The notes under the pieces: generated by a model | The model's input: only the letters and a program-made list of their open reading frames with translations | The model's database searches: none | What the model was told of the DNA's origin: nothing | Origin: Euprymna scolopes | Lineage: Eukaryota | Length of the DNA stretch: 64,000 bases | Direction: 5' to 3' (one strand) | NCBI GenBank assembly: GCA_053919585.1 | Contig: CM132787.1 | Part shown: in pieces, positions 7,758-34,208 of the stretch | Layout: each line of letters opens with the position of its first letter | Numbering within the stretch: the stretch's first letter is position 1 | Program-made: the position numbers and the translations under genes

Positions 7758-9336
7758 TTTTTTTTTACATAGGCATCACCACATTATCAAGGTCCAGAGG
7801 CCACTCAAGGATAAGGGTTAAAGAGTGTACAGTAGAAATTGGACAATATAGTAATTATTAGTAATGAAAATTTGGTAAATTTGATAACTTATATGGAACG
7901 GCTCATCAAGAACTTATATACTTTAGACTTGAACACAACCATATTGTAGTCAGCCGGAAAGCAGGGAAACGGAAGACAATTCCACAGGCGTTCAGTTCTA
8001 AGAAAGAAGCTTTGTTCATGGAATCTACGTTTAGGTTTAGGCACAGATAAAGAGTGGCGGAATTATTGATAGTGTTTACAGCTAGACGAGTGTTTCTTGT
8101 GAAAGTTTGGCGAGGGGGAACCATAGATTGAAGCTCAGTTGAACACTTTCCATGAAAATAACGATACATCAGAGACAAACTCGCAACATCTCTTCTGTGA
8201 GATAGAGGTTGCAGGGAGGAGAAAAGGACATCTCCTACGAGGCTACGAAGTCTATTTTGAACTCTATCAAGGCAGGACAAGTCCTTTCTAGCAGCTCCTG
8301 CCCAGATGTGGCAACAGTATTCCATCCTTGGACGTACCTGACTCTTATATAGATAGAGAATAGCATCAGCAGTGAGATATTTACCGGATCGATAGAAAGA
8401 TCCCACCATTTTCCCAGCGGCCTTGGCAACAGATTTGATGTGCGTGTTCCATTTAAGATCAGGAGTAATGGTCAAGCCAAGAAGCTTGTCAAAACTTGAG
8501 GCCTCCAGAAGACGAGAGCCATTCATATCAATTGATGCCAAATATGGATTAGAATGTTGATGATGTAAGGAGAGAAGCTTGGTTTTAGATGCATTAAAAG
8601 TAACCAGCCACTCCTTACCCCATTGTACTACGTGCTCAAGATCAGAGGAGAGAGAATTGGAGAGAACTTGGTCGTTTACTGTCTTAGATGTGGTACGATA
8701 AATGGTAGTGTCGTCAGCATAAATGTCTACAAATGATGTAAGGATGTGATTTGGAAGATCATTAATGTAGATCAGGAAAAGAGTTGGCCCCGGGATGGAC
8801 CCCTGAGGGACACCGGCATTAATACTGTGAGCTTCTGATTTTTGCCCCTCAACTACTACTCTTATGAACCTATCAGAAAGAAATGATTTAATAATTGAGA
8901 AGACTTTTCCAGCTATACCATAGCTAGCGATCTTATGAAGTAAACCTTTATACCATACCCTATCAAAGGCTTTAGATATGTCAAGAGCAATTGCCCTAGA
9001 AAGATTGCCACCGTCGAGAGATTTGCTAATCCTATGTGATATAACTGTAAGCACATCTGCTGTAGATCTAGCAGAACGGAAACCATATTGAGTGTCACTA
9101 AGAAGGTTATTTTTGTTGAGATGGTTGATTACTTCTGTATTTAACATAGATTCTAGCAACTTACTCATGACGCACAGAAGACTTATTGGCCTGTACTGAG
9201 AGGGGGGTGAGCGATCACCTGAATTCTTAAATACAGGGCATACTGATGAGATTTTCCAGGGAGATGGGAAACTATTCTCCTTAAGACAACGTTTACACAG
9301 TTTTGTAAGTATGGGCGCTAGTTCAGGTTGAAGTAT
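7757..9336 (-). mobile_element. 5'-truncated non-LTR retrotransposon (CR1/L2-group LINE): RT domain, 3'UTR and poly(A)
   Basis: ORF 7906-9396 has RT motifs QYGFR, LDISKAFDRV, GVPQGSI, YADD, FNASKT, RPRMEYCCHIWAG and LQPLSHRR. The poly(A) tail appears as a T-run at ~7757-7767. Confidence 0.95.
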
Positions 9337-9960
9337 CCTCTTTATATGGTCCCACAAGAATTCAATAACGTTCAAATCTAGCGAGTTGGCCGGCAATTCA
9401 AGAACAGAGATCGATCGTTCTCGGAGCCAGAAAGATGTGGTCTAAGCAGAGTATGCCGGTGCCAGTCATGTTGAAAAATGATGTCTGTAGACTCCCTGTC
9501 AAACTGGTTATCCAATACTGGCAGTAAATTAGCTTCCGTTTGCGTTTACAGTTCCTTTGATTAATCATAAATTACCAACACCTTTAGCACACAGACAACC
9601 CCAAACCATGCAAGACCGTGGGAACCTCACAGACGTTTAACGCATTCTTGGGTATACGGTTCCGTGGTTCTTCGCCAAACACGTGACTCTTGGAAGCAGA
9701 TACAAAAATCGAGAGTCATCTGAAATGATCACACACCGCTATTCTTCTGCAGTCCACATTTGATGAGCAGTTGTCCATCGCAGTATCTTCAACATATGCT
9801 ACTTGTTAAGGAGCTGTTTGCTGGCACCTATACGATTTCGGTATCTCAGTTACAGGAGCCTTTGGTAGGTAGTGCTTCTCGAAACGTCGGCACCAGAAGA
9901 GTGTTTCCAGGCTTTAGTGCTGTGACTTGTTGATTGGAATTGACCTTTCTTTGCCACCTT
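9337..9960 (-). pseudogene. Degenerate Tc1-family (DDE) transposase, central part
   Basis: Minus-strand translation with stops and frameshifts: VSRSTTYQRL...WTAEE*RCVIISDDSRF...MVWGCLCAKGVG...IIFQHD...PANSLDLNVIEFLWDHIKR. Confidence 0.9.
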
Positions 9961-12452
9961 GTCCAGTCCCCAAGATCGCCATGGGCATGGACTATGTGCC
10001 TACATTAAGATGGCTTCCCGTGTGGCAGGGATATCTCAAGAGAAGATCCTAATTTACCCTATATGTGCTTCAGGGTTGCACTTACTAACACCATTGCATT
10101 TATATTTGCCCTCTATAGGCCCCACAACAGCGGAGTTACAATCTTTAAGAGCATATCTGAGAAAATAGACAACATACTGTCTTCACATCCCTCGGCTAAC
10201 ATCCACATCTGTGGTGACTTCAACGTCCATAACGTGGAATGGCTGACCCATTCAAATAAGACAGATGATGAGGGGAGGTTTTGTCATGATTTTGCCATTG
10301 CTTATGACCTCACTCAGATTGTTAGCGAACCCACCCGTGTGCCCGATACCCCCGGTCACTATGCAAGCCTTTTAGACCTTTTTATCTCAACTTCCCTTGA
10401 GTTATGTTCATGTTCCGTTCATGCTCCTCTAGGATCCTCCGACCACTCCGTCGTATCAGTTAAGATAAAAACGAAATGTAAGAAGCCCCCAGACGTACCC
10501 CTCCACAGTACTGTATACCGATACTCTATGGCTGACTGGGATAGCTTCCGTACATTCATATCTGATTTACCTCTGCACTCCATGTTTAAAAAGGAAGTGT
10601 CCTCTATAGTATCAGATCGGACCGAATGGTTCATTGTAGGCATAGACCAATTCATACCATCTAAAAGATTTCAACAAAAACCTAACAGCCAGCCATGGTT
10701 CTCCCCAGAATGTGCTGCTGCTATCGCGCACAGAAATCACTTTTTCCATAGCTACAAACGTAATAGATGCACTGAGACTAAAGCTGCTTTCAGGACTGCC
10801 AGCAACCACTGTACAAGAGCAATAAAAAATGCAAGAGAGCTATATGCCCAGTCTGTTAAATCCAAGGTAGCTGATCAGCGGCTTGGATCCCACCAGTTTT
10901 GGCAAATAACAAATAGGATCCTGAACAGAAGTGTGCGTTCTATCCCAACCATTATCAATGTACCAGAGCGTCAGACAAGGCCAAACTATTTGCAAAGAAC
11001 TTTGCAGCTAATTCTACCCTATGCAACGAAGGCCATCAACTCCCCATATTTCCTCCTATAACACAGAACAAGCTAGGTAGCATACAAATATCCGTGCATG
11101 AGGTCGCCAAGCTAATCAAGAACCAAGATTCCAGTAAAGCAACTGGCCCTGATGGCATCCTAATTATAGTGTTAAATAAGCTTCAACCAGAACTTGTTCC
11201 CATACTTACGAAACTATTTAAGCGCTGCCTTAAGGAGAAGTGCTTTCCGAATACCTGGAAGATCTCATCAGCTTGCCCTGTATATAAGAATTCAGGTGAT
11301 AATCATCTCCCTCTCAGTACAGACCTTTAAGTCTCCTGTGTGTTATGAGTAAGTTGCTGGAATCCATATTAAATAGAGAAATAGTCAACCACCTCAGCAG
11401 GAATAACCTTCTTAGTGATATGGTTTCCGCTCTGCAAGATCTACCGCAGATGTGCTGACGGTTATATCCCACAGAATTAGTGAATCTCTTGGCAAAGGCT
11501 TCCTTTCTAAGGCAATTGCTCTTGACATATCAAAAGCCTTCGACAAGGTATGGCATAAGGGTCCACTTCACAACGTTTCAAGCTACGGTATGACTGGAAA
11601 TGTTTTCTCAATCATTAATCATTTCTCTCCGATAGGCTCATAAGAGTAGTGGTAGATGGACAAAAATCGGAGGCCTGCAATATAAATGCTGGAGTCCGTC
11701 AGGGGTCAATCCTGGGCCCAACTCTCTTCCTGCTCTACATCAATGACCTCCCTAAACACATACTTAAATCATTCGTTGACATCTATGCTGATGACACGAC
11801 CATCTACGGCAACACATCAAAGGTTGTAAATGACAAAGTTCTCTCTGATTCTCTCTCCTCTGATCTCGAGCGCGTGGTTCAGTGGGGGAAGAGTTGGCTG
11901 GTTACCTTTAATGCATCCAAAACCAAACCCCTATCCTTACACGCTCTGATCCCCAGCTGGAATCAATTGTGATAGATGGCTCTCGTCTGGGTGAGGCCCC
12001 GTGTTTTGACAAGCTTCTGGGTTTGACCTTTACTCATGATCTGAAATGGAACACGTACATCAAGTCTGTTGCCAAGGTTGCTGGAAAGATGGTGGGATCC
12101 TTCTACCGCTCCAGAAGATATCTCACTACTAATGCAATTCTCTATCTATATAAAAGCCAAGTACGTCCAAGAATTGAATACTGTTGCAATATCTGGGCAG
12201 GAGCTGCTAAAAACAGCCTATCATGCCTTGACAGAGTACAAAATAGACTTCGTGGCTTAGTGGGGGATGCCCTTTTCTCTACCCTGCAACCTCTCTCCCA
12301 CAGAAGAGACGTTGCGAGCCTATCCTTGTTTTATCGTTATTTCTAGGCAGGTGCTCGTCTGAACTCCAATCCCTGGTCCCCCCTCGCCAATCTTTCAGGA
12401 AAAACACCCGTCTAGCTGAATCCACTGTTAAAAGTTTCCCCTACTCTTTATC
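9961..12452 (+). mobile_element. CR1/L2-group LINE copy: APE endonuclease plus RT, frameshifted, truncated at both ends
   Basis: ORFs 10063-11061 (LYRP, ICGDFNVHN, LLDLF, LGSSDH = APE) and 11094-12346 (ATGPDG, LDISKAFDKV, YADD, RPRIEYCC). Same family as 7757-9336, in the opposite orientation. Confidence 0.95.
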
Positions 12453-24208: not shown

Positions 24209-24244
<36 letters not shown>

Positions 24245-24247
<3 letters not shown>

Positions 24248-24711
24248 GAAAATTTTAAATTGGTTGACTTGCCGAGGGTATGTCGATGAGGAGGAAAGGA
24301 GTGCTGGTAGCTGTGACCAACACAACTGGTGGTCAGTTAAGCAAAGAAACTGAGTGTCTATTCATTATAAGTCAAAGAGATATGTCAATCACGCGTGAAT
24401 TTCCTTGACTAGTAGTTGGAGTAGATAAAAGGCGTGACCGCTCTACAGCTGTGGTAGTAGTTGTTGTTGTCTTTTAGACAAAGTACACTTCCACCATCGT
24501 TACTCATTTGTTACTTTTACAAGGAAAGACTGCTTGTAATGAACGTCGACATTTCGTTGCAAGACTTCAAACGTCTTTTCTCCTCCCCCTCCCTACTCGT
24601 CGGTAAGCTAATTCCGACACATTGCAACGGAGTTATTGAGTAAGGACGTTATTTCTATTTAAATGACTGTGATCTTTTTGTGTGCATACATATCCGTGGT
24701 TTTATAAAACA
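24245..24711 (+). repeat. 5' LTR of the BEL/Pao element
   Basis: Starts TGTGAAAATTTTAAA and shares ggagtgctggtagctgtgaccaacac...gttaagcaaagaaactgagtg...tcacgcgtgaat with 29743-29917. The 3' boundary (..aaaaCA followed by PBS-like gtaatgaccgt) is inferred. Confidence 0.8.
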
Positions 24712-27700
24712 GTAATGACCGTCATCTAATGAAACAAAGTGTAACTGATTCTTTTTTTCGTTTTAAATTGCATACATTGAAACGAAATTGATTTCTCCTC
24801 TTTGGAGTTGGATTATTCTAGTGTTCCATTTAATTTATGCCATAGATGATTCAGTCTCAATGGAGGACCTCAAGCAGAAACAAGAACTTCTTCAAGGAAA
24901 CATACTAATCACCCGTAAATGGTAAGAAAATGAAGAGAAGAGCTCTGAAGAATTGCTTTTTCTATTTAAGCGAGAAATAGACGACTGGTTAGATGAGCTT
25001 GAGGGGGTCTCCTTTGGCATGGAGGAAGACTTGGCTGCAAGCGGAGAAGCGGAAGCATTGGCAAGCTTAAGTCTAGCTTCGATCCGCTTTAAATATGAAG
25101 CGAAACAGCGTTTAAAGTCTCTGCGGACAGCCCACCAGAGTGAAACCCCAGCAGTTACCTCGATGGAAGGAGATGTTGACTCAACTTTAGTTATGGCAAC
25201 CCAGTAGCTCCATAAAATGAGAGAACACCACCTTTCAAACCAAAAGCCTATTCTTCATCTTCTGTGATGCCATATAAATAAAATTGAAGGGGCCACGCAT
25301 TGATGGGAAGGACTTTTACACAACTAGAGGAGCTTCAACGACTTCTTGACAAACTTTGAAAATTGTGCCAGGTCAATAGCATCAATCACGGAAATCTTTT
25401 GAGGTGCTCCTTGGAAGGTAGAACCTTCCAACTCATAAATCATCTCTTCCCCTCTGAAGATAGTTACGCTATGGCCCTTAAGCTATTAAAGGATCAATAT
25501 GTGGACGTGGAGGAGATAAGTAGTGAAATGCCAAAGGAAATATTAGATTCCCGGTTAGATAATCCCAAAAACCTGGAAGGATTAAACAAATTTATGATAA
25601 AGAATCAGACGAGTATGTAACATCTAAGGGCCTCGTATAGTTGTGACTTATGTGAGGATAAGTCAGCTGGAGCAATAATAATAGCACAAGTGTTATTAGC
25701 GAAATTCCCGCCCGAAGTAAAGCGAGAACTTTTACGAATCTCTGGGACTACCTACCCGACATTGTCCACACTATTGAAGGAAACACCAAGAATAGTGAAA
25801 CAAATGCTAGTTGCCAGACAGCCGACCAAGGTACTGATGTCCAAACCTAGGCTGCAACCTAAGGTTAATCATGAGGAGACGACTGAAACCTTGTCTCTTA
25901 AAACTTTTAATACCGAATTGAGATCCGAGGTAAGATGCGACTTTTGCAAAAGCAACAAACATTTGTCTGAGGACTGTGGCAACTATACGGCCCATGAAGT
26001 AAGGATAACCAGGTGTAGAGAGCTGCGACTTTGTTTTCGGTGCCTAAAGAGATCTCACGTTGGGAATATATGGGCATTAAGGACACCGAGAAAAATTTGT
26101 TGTCATAGTTGCAACTCTAAATGGCACATAACTGCTATGTGCTCAACTGTTACGAGTAGTATGCAGGTTGATACTTGCCTACATGCAAAATACGATAATG
26201 CTTTCCTTTCTCCCATAATTGAAATAATAGTGAAAAGAGGGGAAAAAAGTAAAGGTAAACCACTGGCAGTCAAAGAACTTATTTGGATTCTATAATTTTA
26301 ACGAAGTTAAATTGCCTCTCCTTCGCAAAGGATAAAATAATGGAAGTAAAGACCGTTTTAGGAACGAATCCTAAAACCTCTAAGGAAATCTCGTTGGGAT
26401 TGAATTTGATGCCCGGCAAAACACATACTCTTCAGATTCTTGCGACCAAGTTGAACTTGTCTTACATCCTTGAAGGACTTAGCATTAAACTTTGCAGCCA
26501 TTCTGCGATTCTTAAAATTTCCAAGAATCTGAGTAAGTAGGTTTTCAACATACAAACTGGATTTCGGTGCCTCCGAACATTCATCAAATGGAACTTCTCT
26601 GAATGGAACTTCAACACGTAATTTAAAATAAAAGGGCTTGCATTGAAGCCAAACATAAGAGTTATTTTTTTACCTGTAGCAATAAAAATGTTCATGTTTC
26701 CTCAGAAAAAAAGCAAAGTCGATTACGATTATTTCCCGATGCCAGACGAATCATCAGAAATGCTTTTCTGTTATCAGTCAACAAGACATATCGGTTTGTT
26801 TGGAATCGGATCATCAATTTCAACGTGTTGAAGTTCTATTCAGAGAAGTTCCATTTGATGAATGTTCGGAGGCACCGAAATCCAGTTTGTATGTTGAAAA
26901 CCTAGTGAAAACTGCGAATAATGAAGAAAATAAATCTGATGTGTATACCTCTGCGAGAGAGCGTCTGCAGAAGGGAAATGTTAATTTACAATCTTCCAAT
27001 TCCAACTGTGTAACACTCCAAAAGAAAATGGAGGCAGATAGAACGTTATCAGGATTCGACTCTGGTTGGGAAAAGGAGCTGGAGTATCAATATGCCCCTG
27101 TCCAAGATTCAATAAGGGTCTTCCCACCATCATGCGACTTGGAGGCATCAACTAAGAGGAAAATATTATCGGAGAAATCGAAGGTATTTGATCCTTTGCC
27201 TCTGTATCTACCTGTGACAGTGCGAGGTCGTTTATTGATGAGAGAATTATGGAGACAAAACTGGATTTGGATTATATGGTTCCTCAAGGTATGAGTTCAG
27301 TTTGGAAAACCTTGGCAAAAGATTGATCAGCGTTAGACTCTGTATCTTTCCCAAGGAGGGTTATATCAGTGAATGATGAAGGAAAGGATACAAAGTTATT
27401 CTTTTTCTAGGATGCGTCTAAAGCCGCATATGGGTTTGCGGTACAGGCTGTACAGGATGGAAATTCATCCTTGGCATTTGCCAAAGCGAAAATGGCTACT
27501 TTGCAGGGAAGATCCCTACCAACGTTGGAATTTTTAGCAGTATTTTAGCAATGAAATGCTCACCTTTTATAAAAGAACCCCTAAAAGACATTACTATAAA
27601 AGACATCTACGTAATCACAGATTCTCAGGTAGTTCTGTCCAGGATTCTGGTTGACTCCGTCCAAACGGAAAATGTATTTGTGCAAAATAGATTGTAGGAC

Positions 27701-29511
27701 ATAGCTTAAATGTCTGAGAAGGCTAAATCTGATTTTAACATAAAGATAAACTTTCAGAACACGTCAACAGTTGACAACCCGGCCGATTACATCCCCAGAG
27801 GTTTGACTATCAAGAAATTAAAGGAAAACAAGCGTCTTTGGTATGAGGGGCCGAAATGGATACGCCAAGAAGAATCCTCCTGTTGTCATCGTGAGTTGAG
27901 TGACCTTTCTAAAGTTCAGATGAAGCGGATTTGCGCTTCAGTAAATTATGCAGCAGAGAATGAAGTGGCTACATCAGAAGTCAAATTGGAAAAATTCTAC
28001 AGTTTGAGTAAGTTGATCAGCGTAACTTCACTGATATTCAAGTTCATCAACAAGTTAAAAAAGATGGATCCTGAGTTACAGGTAAATGGCTACCTAGTCA
28101 AGACGATGCAAAAGCAATCCTTTTTAAAGAAGTTGGACTTTTTGCTAGTCCCTGGAGGAAATGGTGTGCCTAAACTGGTGAATAATTTTAATCTCTTTTT
28201 GGACCACAAGGGCATTATACGATCGATGGGAAGAATAGGAAAATTGGAATATCACTCATATGAGACCCAAACACCTATTTTATTGGGAAAAAAGCATTAT
28301 CAAACAAGATTGATCATCCAAGAATACTACCAAAACAGCCAACATTTGGGCTTGGCCACAACATTGAATGAAATACGATTGGCAGGTTAGTGGATACCAC
28401 AAGTCAAACAGGCTTTTAAAAATATGGTTAGTACTTGTGTGAAATGTAAACGCTTTAATGCCGTTTCCTTTTCAATCCTAAATTCGACCAACTTACCCCT
28501 TGAGTGAATTTTTTCACGCCCAATCTACATACCGGTGTGGATTTTACCAGCCATATCTATGTTAAAGAACAAGAAAAGGATTATAAAATGTACATTATGC
28601 TATTAACATGTATGAGTATTAGGGCTTTACATTTGGAACTGATTCAGGATATGACTGTAAAATCATTTATTCAAGCATTCATTAGGTTCACGAACGTGAA
28701 TGAGATCCCAACCCACCTTTTTTTCGAATAATGCTTGCAAATTTTATGCTTGCCAGAATCATTAACAGTGGCATGATAGTGGATGAATTCAAGGAAACGT
28801 TTAGCCCATATGACTTAAAACATTGTACAATTCCACTGTTTTCGCCTTGGCAGGTGCTAGTTGGGAAAGGTCTATCAAGACCATAAAAGCTCGCTTATAT
28901 AAAGCAACAGGAAGAGGTAAATTAGACTATTTTGGTTTGCTAACAATTTTGTCTGATGTGCAAATAGCCGCCCCCTGATATTTGGGAGTTCTGAGGATGC
29001 TGACCTGAATGTCTTAACTCCTAACTCTCTAATGAATGCGAATGTTGGTCACGGAATAATAATGCGGTTAGAAAACCAGAACCTGGAAACGATGGATCCT
29101 ATTAGTCGACGTGACTTGATTCAAACCCTGCTTTCCAGGGAAGAAAGCCTGACTAAATTTAGGAAAGTTTGGAATGAGGACTATTTATTGAGTCTCAGAG
29201 AAATGGCAATGAGCTTGGCTGATTGTTCTTTTGAAGATAAACTCTAGAGATATGATGCTCATAAAAACCCTCTGAAGACGAGACCTTTCTGGTCCCTATG
29301 TGAAGTTATGCAGCTAATCCAAGGAAGTGATGAATTTGTGCGCATGGTGAAGGTGAGGAAAGGGAATGGAGCTATAAACACATACCCTATCAAGAATCTA
29401 TTTCCTATGAAATTCTCTGAACAGACTGGAGAACCCGACCCGATAGGCATGGAACCATCGGGTTCACAGGATATAAACCAGGACCCTCAGCGGAGAGAGA
29501 GTACTATAATT

Positions 29512-29651
29512 TGGACCTGCCCTAACTGTAACAGACCTGAGTTTTCTAGACCTATGGTAGCCTGCGATAGATGCAATTACTGGTTTCACTTCAGCTGCGT
29601 GGGTCTAACTGAGCATCACCAGAAGATGAACAATGGTTCTGTCCGACTTGC
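29512..29651 (+). pseudogene. C4HC3 PHD finger (TAF3-like) at the C-terminus of BEL/Pao pol, one frameshift
   Basis: WTCPNCNRPEFSRPMVACDRCNYWFHFSCVGLT/ASPEDEQWFCPTC, with a 1-nt deletion near 29611. Confidence 0.9.
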
Positions 29652-29742
29652 AACACACAAGGAGTTGTAACTGGTAGACCCAGTTTTCAAGGAGTCTAAA
29701 CAAACTGTTTTATTCTCTTAAAGAGTTTTATTGTGGGGGATG

Positions 29743-29917
29743 TGTGAGAATTTTAAATGTATTGACGTGCCGACGGTAGGTCGGTGGGGATAAAGGAGTG
29801 CTGGTAGCTGTGACCAACACGGTCGGTGGTCCGTTAAGCAAAGAAACTGAGTGGCTATTCCTTACAAGTTCAATAGACATTCCAGTCACGCGTGAATCTC
29901 TGAGAGTTGGAGTAGAC
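29743..29917 (+). repeat. 3' LTR (truncated) of the BEL/Pao element
   Basis: TGTGAGAATTTTAAATG... homologous to the 5' LTR; preceded by gtgggggatg PPT. Confidence 0.9.
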
Positions 29918-31379: not shown

Positions 31380-32221
31380 TATTCACACGTAACATTTTAA
31401 CGTTTTACAATATATTTTTGTTTATTAAATTGTTAGGTGAAAGTACAGGATAATTGAAATAAAACGAGTTTTGGTAAAACTTATAAATATGTAACAGAAA
31501 TTACAATGTTGATCCGTTCCACGTTCGGTACAATTTTACATTATGGCCAAATCATCGTTAAGATTCGACTTGTAAACTTTTATATGATTGGGGATATGCG
31601 GACAAGTTGGATGTGTACATTCAAAAGAAAAAAAGCCGTTCTTAACATAGGGAGGTTGGGGATATCTATTCCAAAAGCTGTTCTTTACATAGGGAGTTAG
31701 GGGGTTTATTTATTTTGTGCATAACAGTAAACTATGAAGGGTTGCCCCTAAATTGCCCAAGTCTTATATGTGGGGTCGGTATTTATTTGCTCCCCCACCG
31801 AGCAAATTAGGCATAATGCCGATTTTTAATGTGAGGAGTGAAGGGAAAATGGGTGCCAGCTCCCCGGGGAGAAGGGGAGTTGGATAATGACAACTGGTAT
31901 GAAGGGTTTTCCTTACATTTACCAAGGTCTTATATGTGGGGTTGCCCCCACATATGGTCTTTGCTTGTAGTATCTGCCGGAACAGATACTACACTTTGAG
32001 ATATTAACTCCTTTATTCATGTTAAAAATACATTGAAAATCAACAATGAACTAAAAATTTAGGCACATGGCCAACTCAAAAGGGGGGTTTGTTGGTGTCG
32101 TTGGTCATCCTTGTCACTCCAGAACCAAACAAAATCAAGTTTCTCCCAACTAGTCTCTTCTTTCACCATAATACCGCATTCGCCCTTTCATACTGGGGGA
32201 CGTCCTACTTCGCTCCCAATT

Positions 32222-33425
32222 TTTTAAAACATTTTTTATTGACATGTAAAAAAAAAAGATAACAACAAAATTGTACAATAATTCATTGTGTCGAGGGCGG
32301 GGGGGCTGATTAGTAGGACTCTCCCAACCCCGTCTTGTTGATAGACTGCCCGTTCCACTAGATTTGTAAAATGAACCTCGCTTCTGCGGGGCAGTCTCTA
32401 AGTAGGGGTGCCCTTTAGATGGGGGTGAATGGAGAAAAGAAAATTTTGTGGGTAAGGAATGGGGGTTAGTTTGTATTTATTTCTCTCCAAGATGGGTGAA
32501 ATTTAGAGGAGGGGGTGAAAACAAGAATTGCAAGAAGGAGAGGGCGGGGATCTTGGAGGCTTCTTAATCGGGGAGGGATCGAAGACACACTCAGCTAGCT
32601 GAGAGGCTACTTGTTTAATTTCACTTTACGGAACTGCGCGTTCCACACCTAGGCGGGGAACACGTATTCAAATTTGTCTCCTCTTCGTACACACAGACTT
32701 GCTTACATGTATCCATCTTCTTCTAAATGCTACGCAATGCAGCCTTCTTTTATCACATCAGATCTTCACCCGTAGTTAGTGTTTAAAGAAAGTGAGCAGA
32801 CGCTTATCCGAAAAAGACACCCCCCGGCAACCTTGCAGACGCGACGGCTAAATCACCATTCTCGCCACGACCAGGATCATAACGTAGACCATTTGTCTTT
32901 CCTGGTCCCACGGCGGCCTCACGTTGTCCACAACATTGGATACGGTAATTGGGCAAGGATGCTCACGATCGATGCGAGCCGTCACCTCGCTGACATACGA
33001 CCAGTACCGGCGAAGTTCGCGGCAATCGAATAAAGCATGATCAGTCGTTTCTACGGCCGTTGTCTCAAAACGGGGAAATTAGGCGACTCCAAAAACCCGG
33101 AACTGCATTGTATGTTTTTGAGTGGAAGTGCATTTCGGACCAATTGCCAGGCCAGAGTGAACTCCGAATTGTTCAGATGACTCGAACCTGGTGACCAGCT
33201 CCACGCGGAGATGATCTCACTATGCTGCCAACCAAACGCGCGCATAGCGGGTCGTCGGCAACCCCCTTCACTAGATCCCTGTGGAGTTCCCTACGGGTAG
33301 CAGTCACAAGGTCTCGTTTTAGCGCGAGTCGGCACGCTTTCATGTAGGCACATTCTTCCCGCGGGCTCTGATGGCTCTCGATAGAAGAAGGGTCGAGTAC
33401 GAGGTCGGGGAAGGCGGCAGTAACC
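32222..33425 (-). mobile_element. 3' fragment of an L1/Tx1-clade LINE (zf-RVT region, 3'UTR, AATAAA/poly(A))
   Basis: Minus-strand fragments RRELHRDLV...WSPGSSHLNNSEFTLAWQLVRNALPL...ETTDHALFDC. Pyrimidine-rich 3'UTR on the minus strand and aataaa plus A-tail at ~32222-32242. Confidence 0.75.
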
Positions 33426-33429
33426 ACGG

Positions 33430-33586
33430 CGTGCCAAGAAAAAACTTAAAAGCCGAAGAACAGCATCTACTAACAACACACCTTTGATCTTAACCAAAAC
33501 GGTCAAGCACAAAAGTGTTACGGACAGATCGACCGACTGACCGACCGACGGAGTGACTTATAGAGTCGCTTGCATGTTAATAAACA
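33430..33586 (+). mobile_element. Helentron-associated (HINE/DINE-like) 3' end
   Basis: (GACC/GACG)n microsatellite followed by ggagtgacttatagagtcgcttgcatg, a decayed terminal palindrome. Confidence 0.5.
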
Positions 33587-34208
33587 TACAAAAATGTACA
33601 GAAAATTGACTTTTTTTAACTTAAAAATCATATTATTTAATTTTTATGAATAACAGGAGATAATTAGAAAACATTTAGACATGTAAACCGAAAGCAGAAC
33701 TCCTCACAAATAAACAAACAAAAAAAGTCTTAAATCACGGATGCTTTACTTTTCCGCTGAAAAACAATAAACATATAATAACCCGTACTGGTTTATTTTA
33801 TTATATCACACATCTTGACATATTGTTAGCTTAAATTAATAGTGTTTCCGCAGTGTTTTCTTTTTCTTTACCTTTTTTCTAAGGAAAAATTGAAGGCAAG
33901 TTTGCCATATAACATTTTAATTATATAATTGTGTTTTATATCCTCACAATTTTTAGTTATATGTACATGTTAAGTTGTCAACTTAAATTAGATATTGGAT
34001 AGCTAAAATCCGGGAAGCAATTACAAGAGCGAAAAGGCGAGCACAAAAAAATGAAACAATGGTTCTTAAGGCGCTAGTTTATTTATTTGATACTTGTGTC
34101 TGGAAACGTACGTTCAAAATCTAAAATATTAATCAAAAGTTATGATTTCTGTTTATTTGTAACAACGTTTTATTTTTTAAAAATGAAAGAAAGGAATTTT
34201 AGTTTAAA

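What the first reader, a model, noticed from the sequence alone, without database searches (positions are those of the whole stretch)
29308..29745. BEL/Pao retrotransposon with a TAF3-like PHD finger fused after integrase: a candidate H3K4me3-reading integration-targeting module
Seen: downstream of the integrase and DUF5641-like region, and about 90 nt before the 3' LTR, pol continues into IWTCPNCNRPEFSRPMVACDRCNYWFHFSCVGLT(E)ASPEDEQWFCPTC once a 1-nt deletion at ~29611 is repaired. This is a complete C4HC3 PHD finger inside the element. Established: the spacing and sequence closely follow the TAF3 PHD (IWICPGCNKP...PMIGCD.CD.WYH..CVG....PE..QWFCPKC, recalled from memory), an H3K4me3 reader. 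The W, M and W positions that form its methyl-lysine cage are retained. Chromoviruses carry chromodomains at this same integrase C-terminal position, whereas the PHD fingers I know of in Pao-lineage elements sit at the gag N-terminus. Inference: this lineage captured a host TAF3-type reader and may have used it to tether integration to promoter chromatin.
Basis: partly seen in the sequence, partly recalled or inferred. Interest (0 to 1): 0.85.

Follow-up and report, generated by a model that had tools for sequence, protein, structure and literature searches.

The report
BEL/Pao retrotransposon with TAF3-type PHD finger
This is an old, broken copy of a jumping gene (BEL/Pao retrotransposon) whose DNA-inserting enzyme ends in a histone-reading PHD finger very like that of the host transcription factor TAF3; the add-on is a conserved, in-frame part of a whole group of such elements and may steer where they insert, but that role is untested.

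Summary
Window 29518-29651 encodes a C4HC3 PHD finger, broken by a 1-nt deletion near 29611. It lies after the integrase C-terminal domain (DUF5641) of a decayed BEL/Pao element (24245-29916). The pol stop is at 29697-29699, 43 nt before the truncated 3' LTR.

The finger belongs to the element:
- At least 271 candidate copies exist, and all 40 scored cover it.
- 17 of 29 other copies keep all eight zinc ligands in one frame.
- A family member has one 1061-codon frame running RT, Peptidase_A17, integrase, DUF5641, PHD.

Two further BEL/Pao families in this genome (46-50% Pol identity) end the same way. So do metagenomic relatives (48-55% whole-protein identity for P0180) with gag-pol as a single frame.

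The finger is TAF3-type. TAF3 is the best PDB match by 35 bits, and the model superposes on TAF3-H3K4me3 crystals at 1.1 A. Cage residues W868, M882 and W891 are kept, and D877 is E.

Reading of H3K4me3 and steering of integration remain inference. The only insertion signal I found is that LTR ends abut (TA)n repeats far more often than chance.

PHD fingers in transposons are known. I found no paper describing this position in BEL/Pao. The scan had already noted this module 16 times elsewhere in this genome.

The parts
24211..24244 (.). (TA)n microsatellite directly abutting the 5' LTR (likely target site)
   Evidence: The same arrangement occurs on both flanks of two other copies, L007 and L010.
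24245..24619 (+). 5' LTR, about 375 nt, TGTGA...CCGACA
   Evidence: The start and end motifs are shared with other copies. It aligns to the 3' LTR.
25360..25617 (+). gag remnant (DUF1759)
   Evidence: Pfam PF03564 at E 1.2e-5, above the cut-off.
27151..27291 (+). start of the Pao-specific Pol region (Peptidase_A17)
   Evidence: Pfam PF05380 at E 4e-8. The full domain is present in family members.
28504..28728 (+). integrase catalytic-core remnant
   Evidence: No Pfam hit in this decayed copy. It is plainly collinear with the D,D,E core of relative P0001. Family member L054 has Integrase_H2C2 above its cut-off (37.4 vs 25.5 bits) and a sub-threshold rve match (24.9 vs 32.6 bits) at the same place.
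29245..29247 (+). in-frame stop codon inside the integrase C-terminal region
29287..29403 (+). integrase C-terminal domain (DUF5641)
   Evidence: In the window piece, Pfam PF18701 scores 19.8 bits, below its 23.1 cut-off (E 9e-4). Intact copies score E 1e-10 to 3.5e-7, above the cut-off.
29404..29517 (+). acidic, Ser/Pro-rich linker of about 40 residues
   Evidence: Translation. The model has low confidence N-terminal of the finger.
29518..29651 (+). TAF3-type PHD finger (C4HC3), frame broken by a 1-nt deletion at about 29611-29613
29652..29699 (+). 15-residue tail holding a GRP motif, then the pol stop codon (29697-29699)
   Evidence: The tail aligns with the KRRRGRPSLL tail of family C and its metagenomic relatives.
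29700..29742 (+). spacer ending in a purine-rich run (polypurine-tract position)
   Evidence: Sequence read. The position is immediately 5' of the LTR. The function is inferred.
29743..29916 (+). 3' LTR, truncated (174 of about 375 nt)
   Evidence: It is 85% identical to the 5' LTR, K2P 0.17.

Best explanation
Window 24245-29916 is a dead, old copy of a BEL/Pao LTR retrotransposon family. The Pol of this family ends in this order: integrase core, integrase C-terminal domain (DUF5641), a flexible acidic linker of about 40 residues, a TAF3-type PHD finger, and a short GRP-containing tail.

Shown:
- The finger is an in-frame part of Pol that is kept across diverged families.
- It is shared by a group of BEL/Pao families.
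- It was gained once or a few times, from a TAF3-like source.
- It keeps the residues that form TAF3's trimethyl-lysine cage.

Inferred: the finger binds the H3 tail carrying K4me3. It thereby holds the intasome on nucleosomes of active promoters, as the chromodomain of chromoviruses does for H3K9me heterochromatin. The basic or AT-hook-like tail, or the integrase itself, may add a preference for AT-rich DNA such as (TA)n.
For: Identity and position:
- Pfam PHD and DUF5641 both fall in one frame in natural copies. PHD scores E 2e-12 to 2e-10 and DUF5641 scores E 1e-10 to 3.5e-7.
- L054 has a 1061-codon frame holding RVT_1, Peptidase_A17, Integrase_H2C2, rve, DUF5641 and PHD.

Fixed part of the family:
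- There are at least 271 candidate copies. All 40 scored copies cover the finger.
- 17 of 29 other copies keep C4HC3 in one frame.

Conservation across lineages:
- Families A, B and C in this genome are 46-50% identical in Pol and align end to end through the PHD.
- Metagenomic gag-pol frames P0180, P0032, P0192 and P0193 have the same architecture.
- All of these keep the eight ligands and also M, D and W of the cage region.
- A sublineage of family A differs from the rest at dN/dS of about 0.24-0.26, including within the finger.
- In a tree of the DUF5641 region alone, all PHD-bearing rows fall on one side of a branch. That needs 1 change, against 8.7 for shuffled labels.

TAF3 type:
- PDB phmmer gives TAF3 at E 2e-21 and 78.8 bits, with 33 of 50 residues identical and no gap. 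The next family, PHF2, scores 43.8 bits.
- The best non-transposon hits carry Bromo_TP plus PHD, i.e. they are TAF3.
- The AlphaFold model (pLDDT 82-88 over the finger) superposes on TAF3-H3K4me3 crystals at 1.1 A over 48 columns.
- The TAF3 cage is D877, M882, W868 and W891 (PMC12238850), and M882A weakens binding more than 100-fold (PMC8246079). The element has E, M, W and W at those places.

Plausibility of targeting:
- Fusing an H3K4me3-binding PHD (from ING2) to the LEDGF integrase-binding domain redirected HIV-1 integration toward TSSs (PMC8149907).
Against: - No binding or integration data exist.
- D889, which contacts H3R2 in TAF3, is N in family A. W894 is F.
- The only measurable insertion signal is (TA)n microsatellites at the LTR ends, in 5-7 of about 20 copies against 1.6-3% expected. 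This does not point to promoters and may be set by the integrase or the tail instead.
- Copies of the window's own burst decay neutrally, with flat codon-position diversity. Selection is therefore seen only between lineages.
- The single-gain branch has weak support (SH-aLRT 75). The rows in that tree were picked as best hits of a PHD-bearing query.
- The TAF3 PHD also binds phosphoinositides (abstract of PMC4429956), so a role other than histone reading is possible.
Confidence: 0.55

Rival explanations
1. The finger is a working chromatin or lipid binder but does not choose the target site. It might keep the pre-integration complex in the nucleus or on chromatin, mimic or compete with TAF3 at promoters to favour the element's own transcription, or bind nuclear phosphoinositides. 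On this view, site choice is set by the integrase and by DNA features such as (TA)n.
For: LTR ends abut (TA)n far above background, and on both flanks where both could be read. The TAF3 PHD is reported to bind phosphoinositides (PMC4429956). The tail after the finger is basic or AT-hook-like in family C and its relatives.
Against: The finger occupies the same topological position as the chromodomain that directs chromovirus integration (Gao et al. 2008, cited in PMC6673714). Engineered PHD tethers do redirect integration (PMC8149907). Family A has lost the basic residues of the tail yet still shows the (TA)n bias, so the bias need not involve this module at all.
Confidence: 0.3
2. The PHD fingers of families A, B and C were captured independently from host TAF3 genes, as recurrent exon capture at the 3' end of pol, rather than inherited from one ancestral element.
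For: Each family's finger is as close or closer to TAF3 fingers (27-33 of 49 identical) than to the fingers of the other families (23-26 of 49). In the PHD-only tree, the TE fingers fall in at least three places.
Against: The PHD tree has 52 columns and almost no support. A slowly evolving TAF3 would also be closer to each fast-evolving TE lineage than those lineages are to each other. In the DUF5641-region tree, PHD-bearing elements group together. Families A and C, and P0180, P0192, P0193 and P0115, share the GRPSL tail after the finger.
Confidence: 0.2
3. The finger is an accident of this locus: a host exon, a TAF3 pseudogene fragment or a chance Cys/His pattern next to a decayed element.
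For: Only that this particular copy is frameshifted and decayed.
Against: The same sequence sits at the same place in all 40 scored copies, between DUF5641 and the 3' LTR. It lies in long uninterrupted Pol frames elsewhere. Pfam and PDB E-values are far beyond chance.
Confidence: 0.01

Closest known systems
Chromoviruses (Ty3/gypsy elements with a chromodomain at the integrase C-terminus, e.g. Tf1, MAGGY)
   Same: A host-type histone-methyl-lysine reader is appended directly after the integrase C-terminal domain of an LTR retrotransposon. It is conserved across a clade. It is thought, and for chromoviruses reported, to direct integration to chromatin carrying that mark (Gao et al. 2008, cited in PMC6673714).
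   Different: The superfamily differs (BEL/Pao, not Ty3/gypsy). The fold differs (a zinc-binding PHD, not a chromodomain). The predicted mark differs (H3K4me3 of active promoters, not H3K9me heterochromatin). No functional data exist here.
TAF3 (TFIID subunit 3) PHD finger
   Same: 33 of 50 residues are identical to human and mouse TAF3 without a gap. The model lies 1.1 A from TAF3-H3K4me3 crystals. Cage residues W868, M882 and W891 are kept and D877 is E.
   Different: There is no Bromo_TP/histone-fold domain, and the finger sits inside a retrotransposon Pol. D889 is N and W894 is F. It is a relative of the domain, not a TAF3 gene.
Other transposon-borne PHD fingers: CR1 non-LTR elements, Rehavkus DNA transposons, Chlamydomonas Gypsy-7a_cRei and REM1, Chlamys Penelope-like elements
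   Same: A PHD serves as an accessory domain of a transposon protein, with a proposed chromatin role (PMC9940879, PMC8557442, PMC6673714).
   Different: Those fingers sit elsewhere (between RNase H and integrase, or inside RT or the endonuclease) and in other element classes. In the passages I read, none is described as TAF3-type or as a BEL/Pao integrase C-terminal extension. The main BEL/Pao survey does not mention PHD at all (PMC3118150).
CopiaMBD retrotransposons of arthropods
   Same: A host chromatin-reader domain was captured into Pol, is monophyletic among elements, and is proposed to guide integration (PMC6673714).
   Different: The domain is a methyl-CpG-binding domain in Copia elements, and its DNA binding was tested there by DAP-seq. 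Nothing has been tested here.
Engineered LEDGF(IBD)-ING2 PHD tethers for HIV-1
   Same: An H3K4me3-binding PHD linked to an integrase shifts integration toward TSSs (PMC8149907). This is the artificial counterpart of the proposed mechanism.
   Different: The fusion is artificial and acts through a cofactor, not as part of the integrase polypeptide.
BEL/Pao elements with an N-terminal PHD in gag
   Same: They belong to the same superfamily and carry a PHD-type finger (P0195: PHD_2 at residues 19-61 of a 2000-aa gag-pol).
   Different: The finger is at the opposite end of the polyprotein. It is not TAF3-like (15-19 of 47 identical to the fingers described here).

Membership tests
BEL/Pao LTR retrotransposon (Belpaoviridae) | Direct long terminal repeats flanking the coding region | tested here: met
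   5' LTR at 24245-24619 and truncated 3' LTR at 29743-29916, 85% alike. Other copies have full 375-nt LTRs with TG...CA ends.
BEL/Pao LTR retrotransposon (Belpaoviridae) | Pao-specific Pol and Gag signatures (Peptidase_A17, DUF1759, DUF5641), with the integrase after RT/RNase H | tested here: met
   In the window copy, DUF1759 and Peptidase_A17 score above their cut-offs, while DUF5641 scores 19.8 bits against a cut-off of 23.1. Family member L054 has, in this order, RVT_1, Peptidase_A17, Integrase_H2C2, a sub-threshold rve match, and DUF5641.
PHD finger (Pfam PF00628) | C4HC3 zinc-ligand pattern with canonical spacing, and a score above the Pfam cut-off | tested here: met
   The window piece scores 33 bits against a cut-off of 24, although truncated. 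Intact copies score 41-49 bits. In the window copy the eight ligands are split over two frames.
TAF3-type PHD (H3K4me3 reader) | Closest relatives by sequence and by fold are TAF3 fingers | tested here: met
   By sequence, TAF3 scores 78.8 bits against 43.8 bits for the next PDB family. By fold, the top five Foldseek hits are TAF3 PHD, at 1.1-1.3 A for the four crystal entries. The best non-TE database hits carry Bromo_TP plus PHD.
TAF3-type PHD (H3K4me3 reader) | Trimethyl-lysine cage residues (TAF3 D877, M882, W868, W891) | tested here: met
   The element has E, M, W and W in family A and in the window copy. M and the second W are invariant, and the first W nearly so, across TE and TAF3 rows.
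TAF3-type PHD (H3K4me3 reader) | Measured binding to H3K4me3 peptide or nucleosome | not testable with these tools
   Needs ITC or pull-down with the recombinant finger.
TAF3 gene (TFIID subunit 3) | N-terminal histone-fold / Bromo_TP domain in the same protein | tested here: not met
   The finger lies in Pol frames without Bromo_TP. A host Bromo_TP exon lies on another contig.
Chromovirus | Ty3/gypsy Pol with a chromodomain after the integrase | tested here: not met
   No chromodomain hit; the signatures are BEL/Pao. The resemblance is functional and positional only.
AT-hook | An R-G-R-P core flanked by basic residues | tested here: inconclusive
   Family C, P0180, P0192, P0193 and P0115 have K/R-R-R-G-R-P-S after the finger, but Pfam lists no AT-hook match for any of the three tails scanned. 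The window's family keeps only T-G-R-P without basic flanks.

The most novel reading that the evidence does not exclude
A clade of BEL/Pao retrotransposons carries the first natural integrase-H3K4me3-reader fusion. On this reading, a captured TAF3 C-terminal module (the PHD plus its basic tail) tethers the intasome to promoter-proximal, H3K4me3-marked nucleosomes. It may do so in combination with AT-rich DNA such as (TA)n. This would be the euchromatic mirror image of chromovirus targeting.
Probability: 0.35. Interest if true: 0.8.

Novelty: new variant of a known kind. Interest (0 to 1): 0.6.

Why it matters
How LTR retrotransposons and retroviruses choose integration sites is a central question. 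Known natural solutions use host cofactors (LEDGF, BET proteins, TFIIIB, Sir4) or, in chromoviruses, a built-in chromodomain.

A built-in reader of H3K4me3 would be a second, opposite built-in solution. It would aim at active promoters, in a superfamily (BEL/Pao) for which I found no targeting module described.

It would also be a clean natural case of a transposon capturing a basal transcription factor's chromatin reader. The genome holds PHD-bearing and PHD-less BEL/Pao families side by side. The hypothesis can therefore be tested by comparing their natural insertion sites with H3K4me3 maps, and by simple peptide-binding assays on the isolated finger.

The particular copy in this window is only a fossil.

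Tried and rejected
1. Host TAF3 comparison. A TAF3-like Bromo_TP exon was found at contig C28, about 91.77 Mb. Searching the genome with a TAF3 protein returned only transposon fingers (13,666 first-look candidates). Its N-terminus found nothing.

2. PHD-only phylogeny (72 rows, 52 columns). It is essentially unresolved and cannot decide between single and multiple capture.

3. dN/dS among intact family-A copies (0.29-0.50). I rejected this as evidence because choosing intact copies biases it. The unbiased codon-position diversity over all 30 copies is flat, at 0.047-0.077, which means neutral decay. Only the comparison with the L054 sublineage and the between-family conservation are used.

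4. The AT-hook was not confirmed by Pfam.

5. Expression. The runs that hold the sequence are contigs of uncertain kind ('RNA?' is a guess), so nothing can be said about transcription.

6. DNA of two close relatives in an ENA assembly could not be fetched.

7. Literature searches for BEL/Pao plus PHD, and for DUF5641 plus PHD, found nothing. The REM1 paper is not held.

8. The chance or host-exon explanation is rejected.

9. My first strand-blind count of intact fingers (12 of 29) was wrong, because 13 loci were on the minus strand. The corrected count is 17 of 29.
Full report
**What is in the window**

The stretch 29308-29700 translates in one frame through the end of a DUF5641-like region and a linker. 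It then reads IWTCPNCNRPEFSRPMVACDRCNYWFHFSCVGLTE before leaving the frame. The +2 frame carries on with ASPEDEQWFCPTC, a 15-residue tail containing GRP, and a stop at 29697-29699.

The first piece alone hits Pfam PHD above threshold, at E 6e-8 and 33 bits against a cut-off of 24. It also hits DUF5641 upstream in the same frame, at 19.8 bits, just below that model's 23.1 cut-off. Projected onto an intact family member, the finger has exactly one 1-nt deletion. About half of the contigs from public runs that lie on this place carry one more base behind 29611.

**The element**

- A 375-nt LTR (TGTGA...CCGACA) lies at 24245-24619, and a truncated copy at 29743-29916. The two are 85% identical, K2P 0.17.
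- Between them lie a gag remnant (DUF1759), the start of the Pao-specific Peptidase_A17 region, a decayed integrase core, DUF5641 and the PHD. Many frameshifts are present, and there is an in-frame stop at 29245-29247.
- This is a fossil copy. It is older than typical members, whose LTRs are about 95% alike.

**The finger belongs to the element**

- The 5.9-Gb genome has at least 271 candidate copies of the 3' part of pol. All 40 that were scored cover the finger at 85-89% identity. There are at least 1651 LTR candidates.
- Of 29 other copies read, 17 keep all eight zinc ligands in one frame, and the stop falls at the same place.
- Natural frames join DUF5641 and PHD.
- One family member has a 1061-codon frame holding RVT_1, Peptidase_A17, Integrase_H2C2, a weak rve match, DUF5641 and PHD.
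- I built no consensus. All statements rest on individual natural copies.

**The module is wider and older than this family**

- A search of the genome with a TAF3 protein returned only transposon fingers, many of them inside very long open frames.
- Two further families, here called B and C, have uninterrupted gag-pol frames with DUF1759, Peptidase_A17, Integrase_H2C2, DUF5641 and a C-terminal PHD.
- Families A, B and C are only 46-50% identical in Pol, yet they align through to the finger.
- Outside this genome, P0180 and P0032 show the same single-frame architecture. They are 99.8% alike and come from two unrelated metagenome assemblies, on contigs of 49% GC. P0192 and P0193 show it too. 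P0180 is 48-55% identical to families A and C over the whole protein; over the C-terminal 297 residues, identity to family C is 55-69% for P0032, P0192 and P0193.
- Many other BEL/Pao proteins end 30-110 residues after DUF5641 with no finger.
- In a tree of the DUF5641 region alone, the PHD-bearing rows fall on one side of a branch. That needs 1 change, against 8.7 for shuffled labels, but the branch support is weak (SH-aLRT 75).
- Families A and C and the metagenomic relatives also share the GRPSL motif after the finger.
- Together this favours one old gain, but does not prove it.

**Selection**

- Among the 30 copies of the window's burst, diversity is flat over codon positions (0.047-0.077), so they decay neutrally. 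The dN/dS of 0.3-0.5 among intact copies is biased by the way those copies were chosen.
- Constraint is visible between lineages. A distinct family-A sublineage differs from the rest at dS 0.35 and dN 0.08, giving dN/dS 0.24 overall and 0.26 within the finger.
- All families keep the ligands and the cage region at about 50% Pol divergence.

**TAF3 type**

- Against all PDB sequences, the four best matches are TAF3 PHD fingers: E 2e-21, 78.8 bits, 33 of 50 residues identical, no gap. The next family, PHF2, scores 43.8 bits.
- Against 1.8 billion representatives, the best non-transposon matches carry Bromo_TP plus PHD. Named examples are TAF3 of a mite and of the gastropods Gigantopelta and Haliotis.
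- An AlphaFold model (pLDDT 82-88 over the finger) superposes on TAF3-H3K4me3 crystals at 1.1 A over 48 columns. The other matches at E below 0.001 are also PHD fingers, most of them solved in complex with H3K4me3 or H3K4me2 peptides.
- TAF3's cage is D877, M882, W868 and W891 (PMC12238850), and M882A weakens binding more than 100-fold (PMC8246079). The element has E, M, W and W at those positions. I883, D886 and E905 are also kept, while D889 is N and W894 is F.

**Mechanism**

The anatomy is an integrase C-terminal domain, a flexible acidic linker, a reader finger and a short tail. This matches the chromovirus design, with a PHD in place of the chromodomain.

Established knowledge makes H3K4me3-guided tethering the most likely role:
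- Chromodomains direct chromovirus integration (Gao et al. 2008, cited in PMC6673714).
- A LEDGF-ING2-PHD tether redirects HIV-1 integration toward TSSs (PMC8149907).

Neither binding nor targeting is shown here. The only insertion-site signal I could measure is different:
- In 5-7 of about 20 copies with a complete 3' LTR end, an (AT)n run begins at the first base after the LTR. Background is 1.6-3%, binomial P about 1e-5.
- In the two such copies whose 5' ends I could read, and in the window copy, (TA)n also abuts the 5' LTR.

This indicates insertion into (TA)n tracts. Whether the integrase, the GRP tail or the finger causes this bias is unknown. It neither supports nor excludes promoter targeting.

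**Comparison and novelty**

- PHD fingers in transposons are known: CR1, Rehavkus, Chlamydomonas Gypsy-7a_cRei and REM1, and Chlamys elements. One paper calls retrotransposon PHDs widespread.
- A different, non-TAF3 PHD sits at the gag N-terminus of another BEL/Pao protein (P0195).
- I found no paper describing a TAF3-type finger at the BEL/Pao integrase C-terminus. The large BEL/Pao survey does not mention PHD.
- I therefore class it as a new variant of a known kind.
- The scan has already noted this module 16 times on other DNA of this genome, including one follow-up that reached a similar reading. This window adds a decayed copy of a high-copy family and the points above.

**Limits**

- The host's own TAF3 PHD exon could not be read.
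- The organism names are coded.
- Transcription could not be judged.
- The taxonomic origin of the metagenomic relatives is unknown.

Noticed in passing
window 24211-24244; loci L007, L009, L010, L018, L023, L024, L027 (3' flanks); L032, L033 (5' flanks): The LTR ends of this family directly abut (TA)n/(AT)n microsatellites in 5-7 of about 20 copies, against 1.6-3% expected. Where both flanks could be read, the repeat is on both. This suggests a target-site preference for (TA)n.
   Followed up: partly
loci L051, L053 (family B), L052 (family C), and further places listed: The same genome holds at least two other BEL/Pao families with a C-terminal TAF3-like PHD. Several copies have uninterrupted gag-pol reading frames of about 1,450-1,900 codons. 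This suggests much younger activity than the window's family.
   Followed up: partly
L052 C-terminus; P0180, P0192, P0193, P0115: In family C and its metagenomic relatives the finger is followed by K/R-R-R-G-R-P-S-L-L, an AT-hook-like motif. The window's family keeps only T-G-R-P-S-L. Gastropod TAF3 also has a basic G-R-G-R-G tail after its finger, so the finger and the tail may have been captured together.
   Followed up: partly
P0195 (ENA contig of 573 kb): A 2000-aa BEL/Pao gag-pol carries a different, non-TAF3 PHD (PHD_2) at residues 19-61, i.e. at the gag N-terminus.
   Followed up: no
P0039, P0035, P0076, P0092: These short predicted proteins hold two tandem TAF3-like fingers. P0035 also has DUF5641, so some BEL/Pao lineages seem to end in tandem PHDs. 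An earlier scan note on this genome reports the same.
   Followed up: no
P0037 (Halotydeus destructor TAF3), P0044/P0182 (Blomia tropicalis), P0050, P0081: TAF3 homologues of mites and of some unnamed sources carry two or three PHD fingers, not one.
   Followed up: no
L023 (C140) and L027 (C16): Two copies share the same flanking sequence after the LTR and its (AT)n run. This is one insertion duplicated with its surroundings, or an unplaced contig that repeats a chromosome segment.
   Followed up: no
window 29917 onward: The 3' LTR of the window copy breaks off after 174 of about 375 nt. The following sequence is unrelated, so no target-site duplication can be read for this copy.
   Followed up: partly
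window 8001-12000 and 32001-34000; 1331 N in the window: Two segments have about 43% G+C against a background of about 30%. They were not examined. The masked or gap letters were left as they are.
   Followed up: no
G000 C28:91772935-91773090 (-), locus L055: A Bromo_TP exon whose N-terminus resembles TAF3 as I recall it (no alignment was run). It is probably the first coding exon of the host TAF3 gene.
   Followed up: partly
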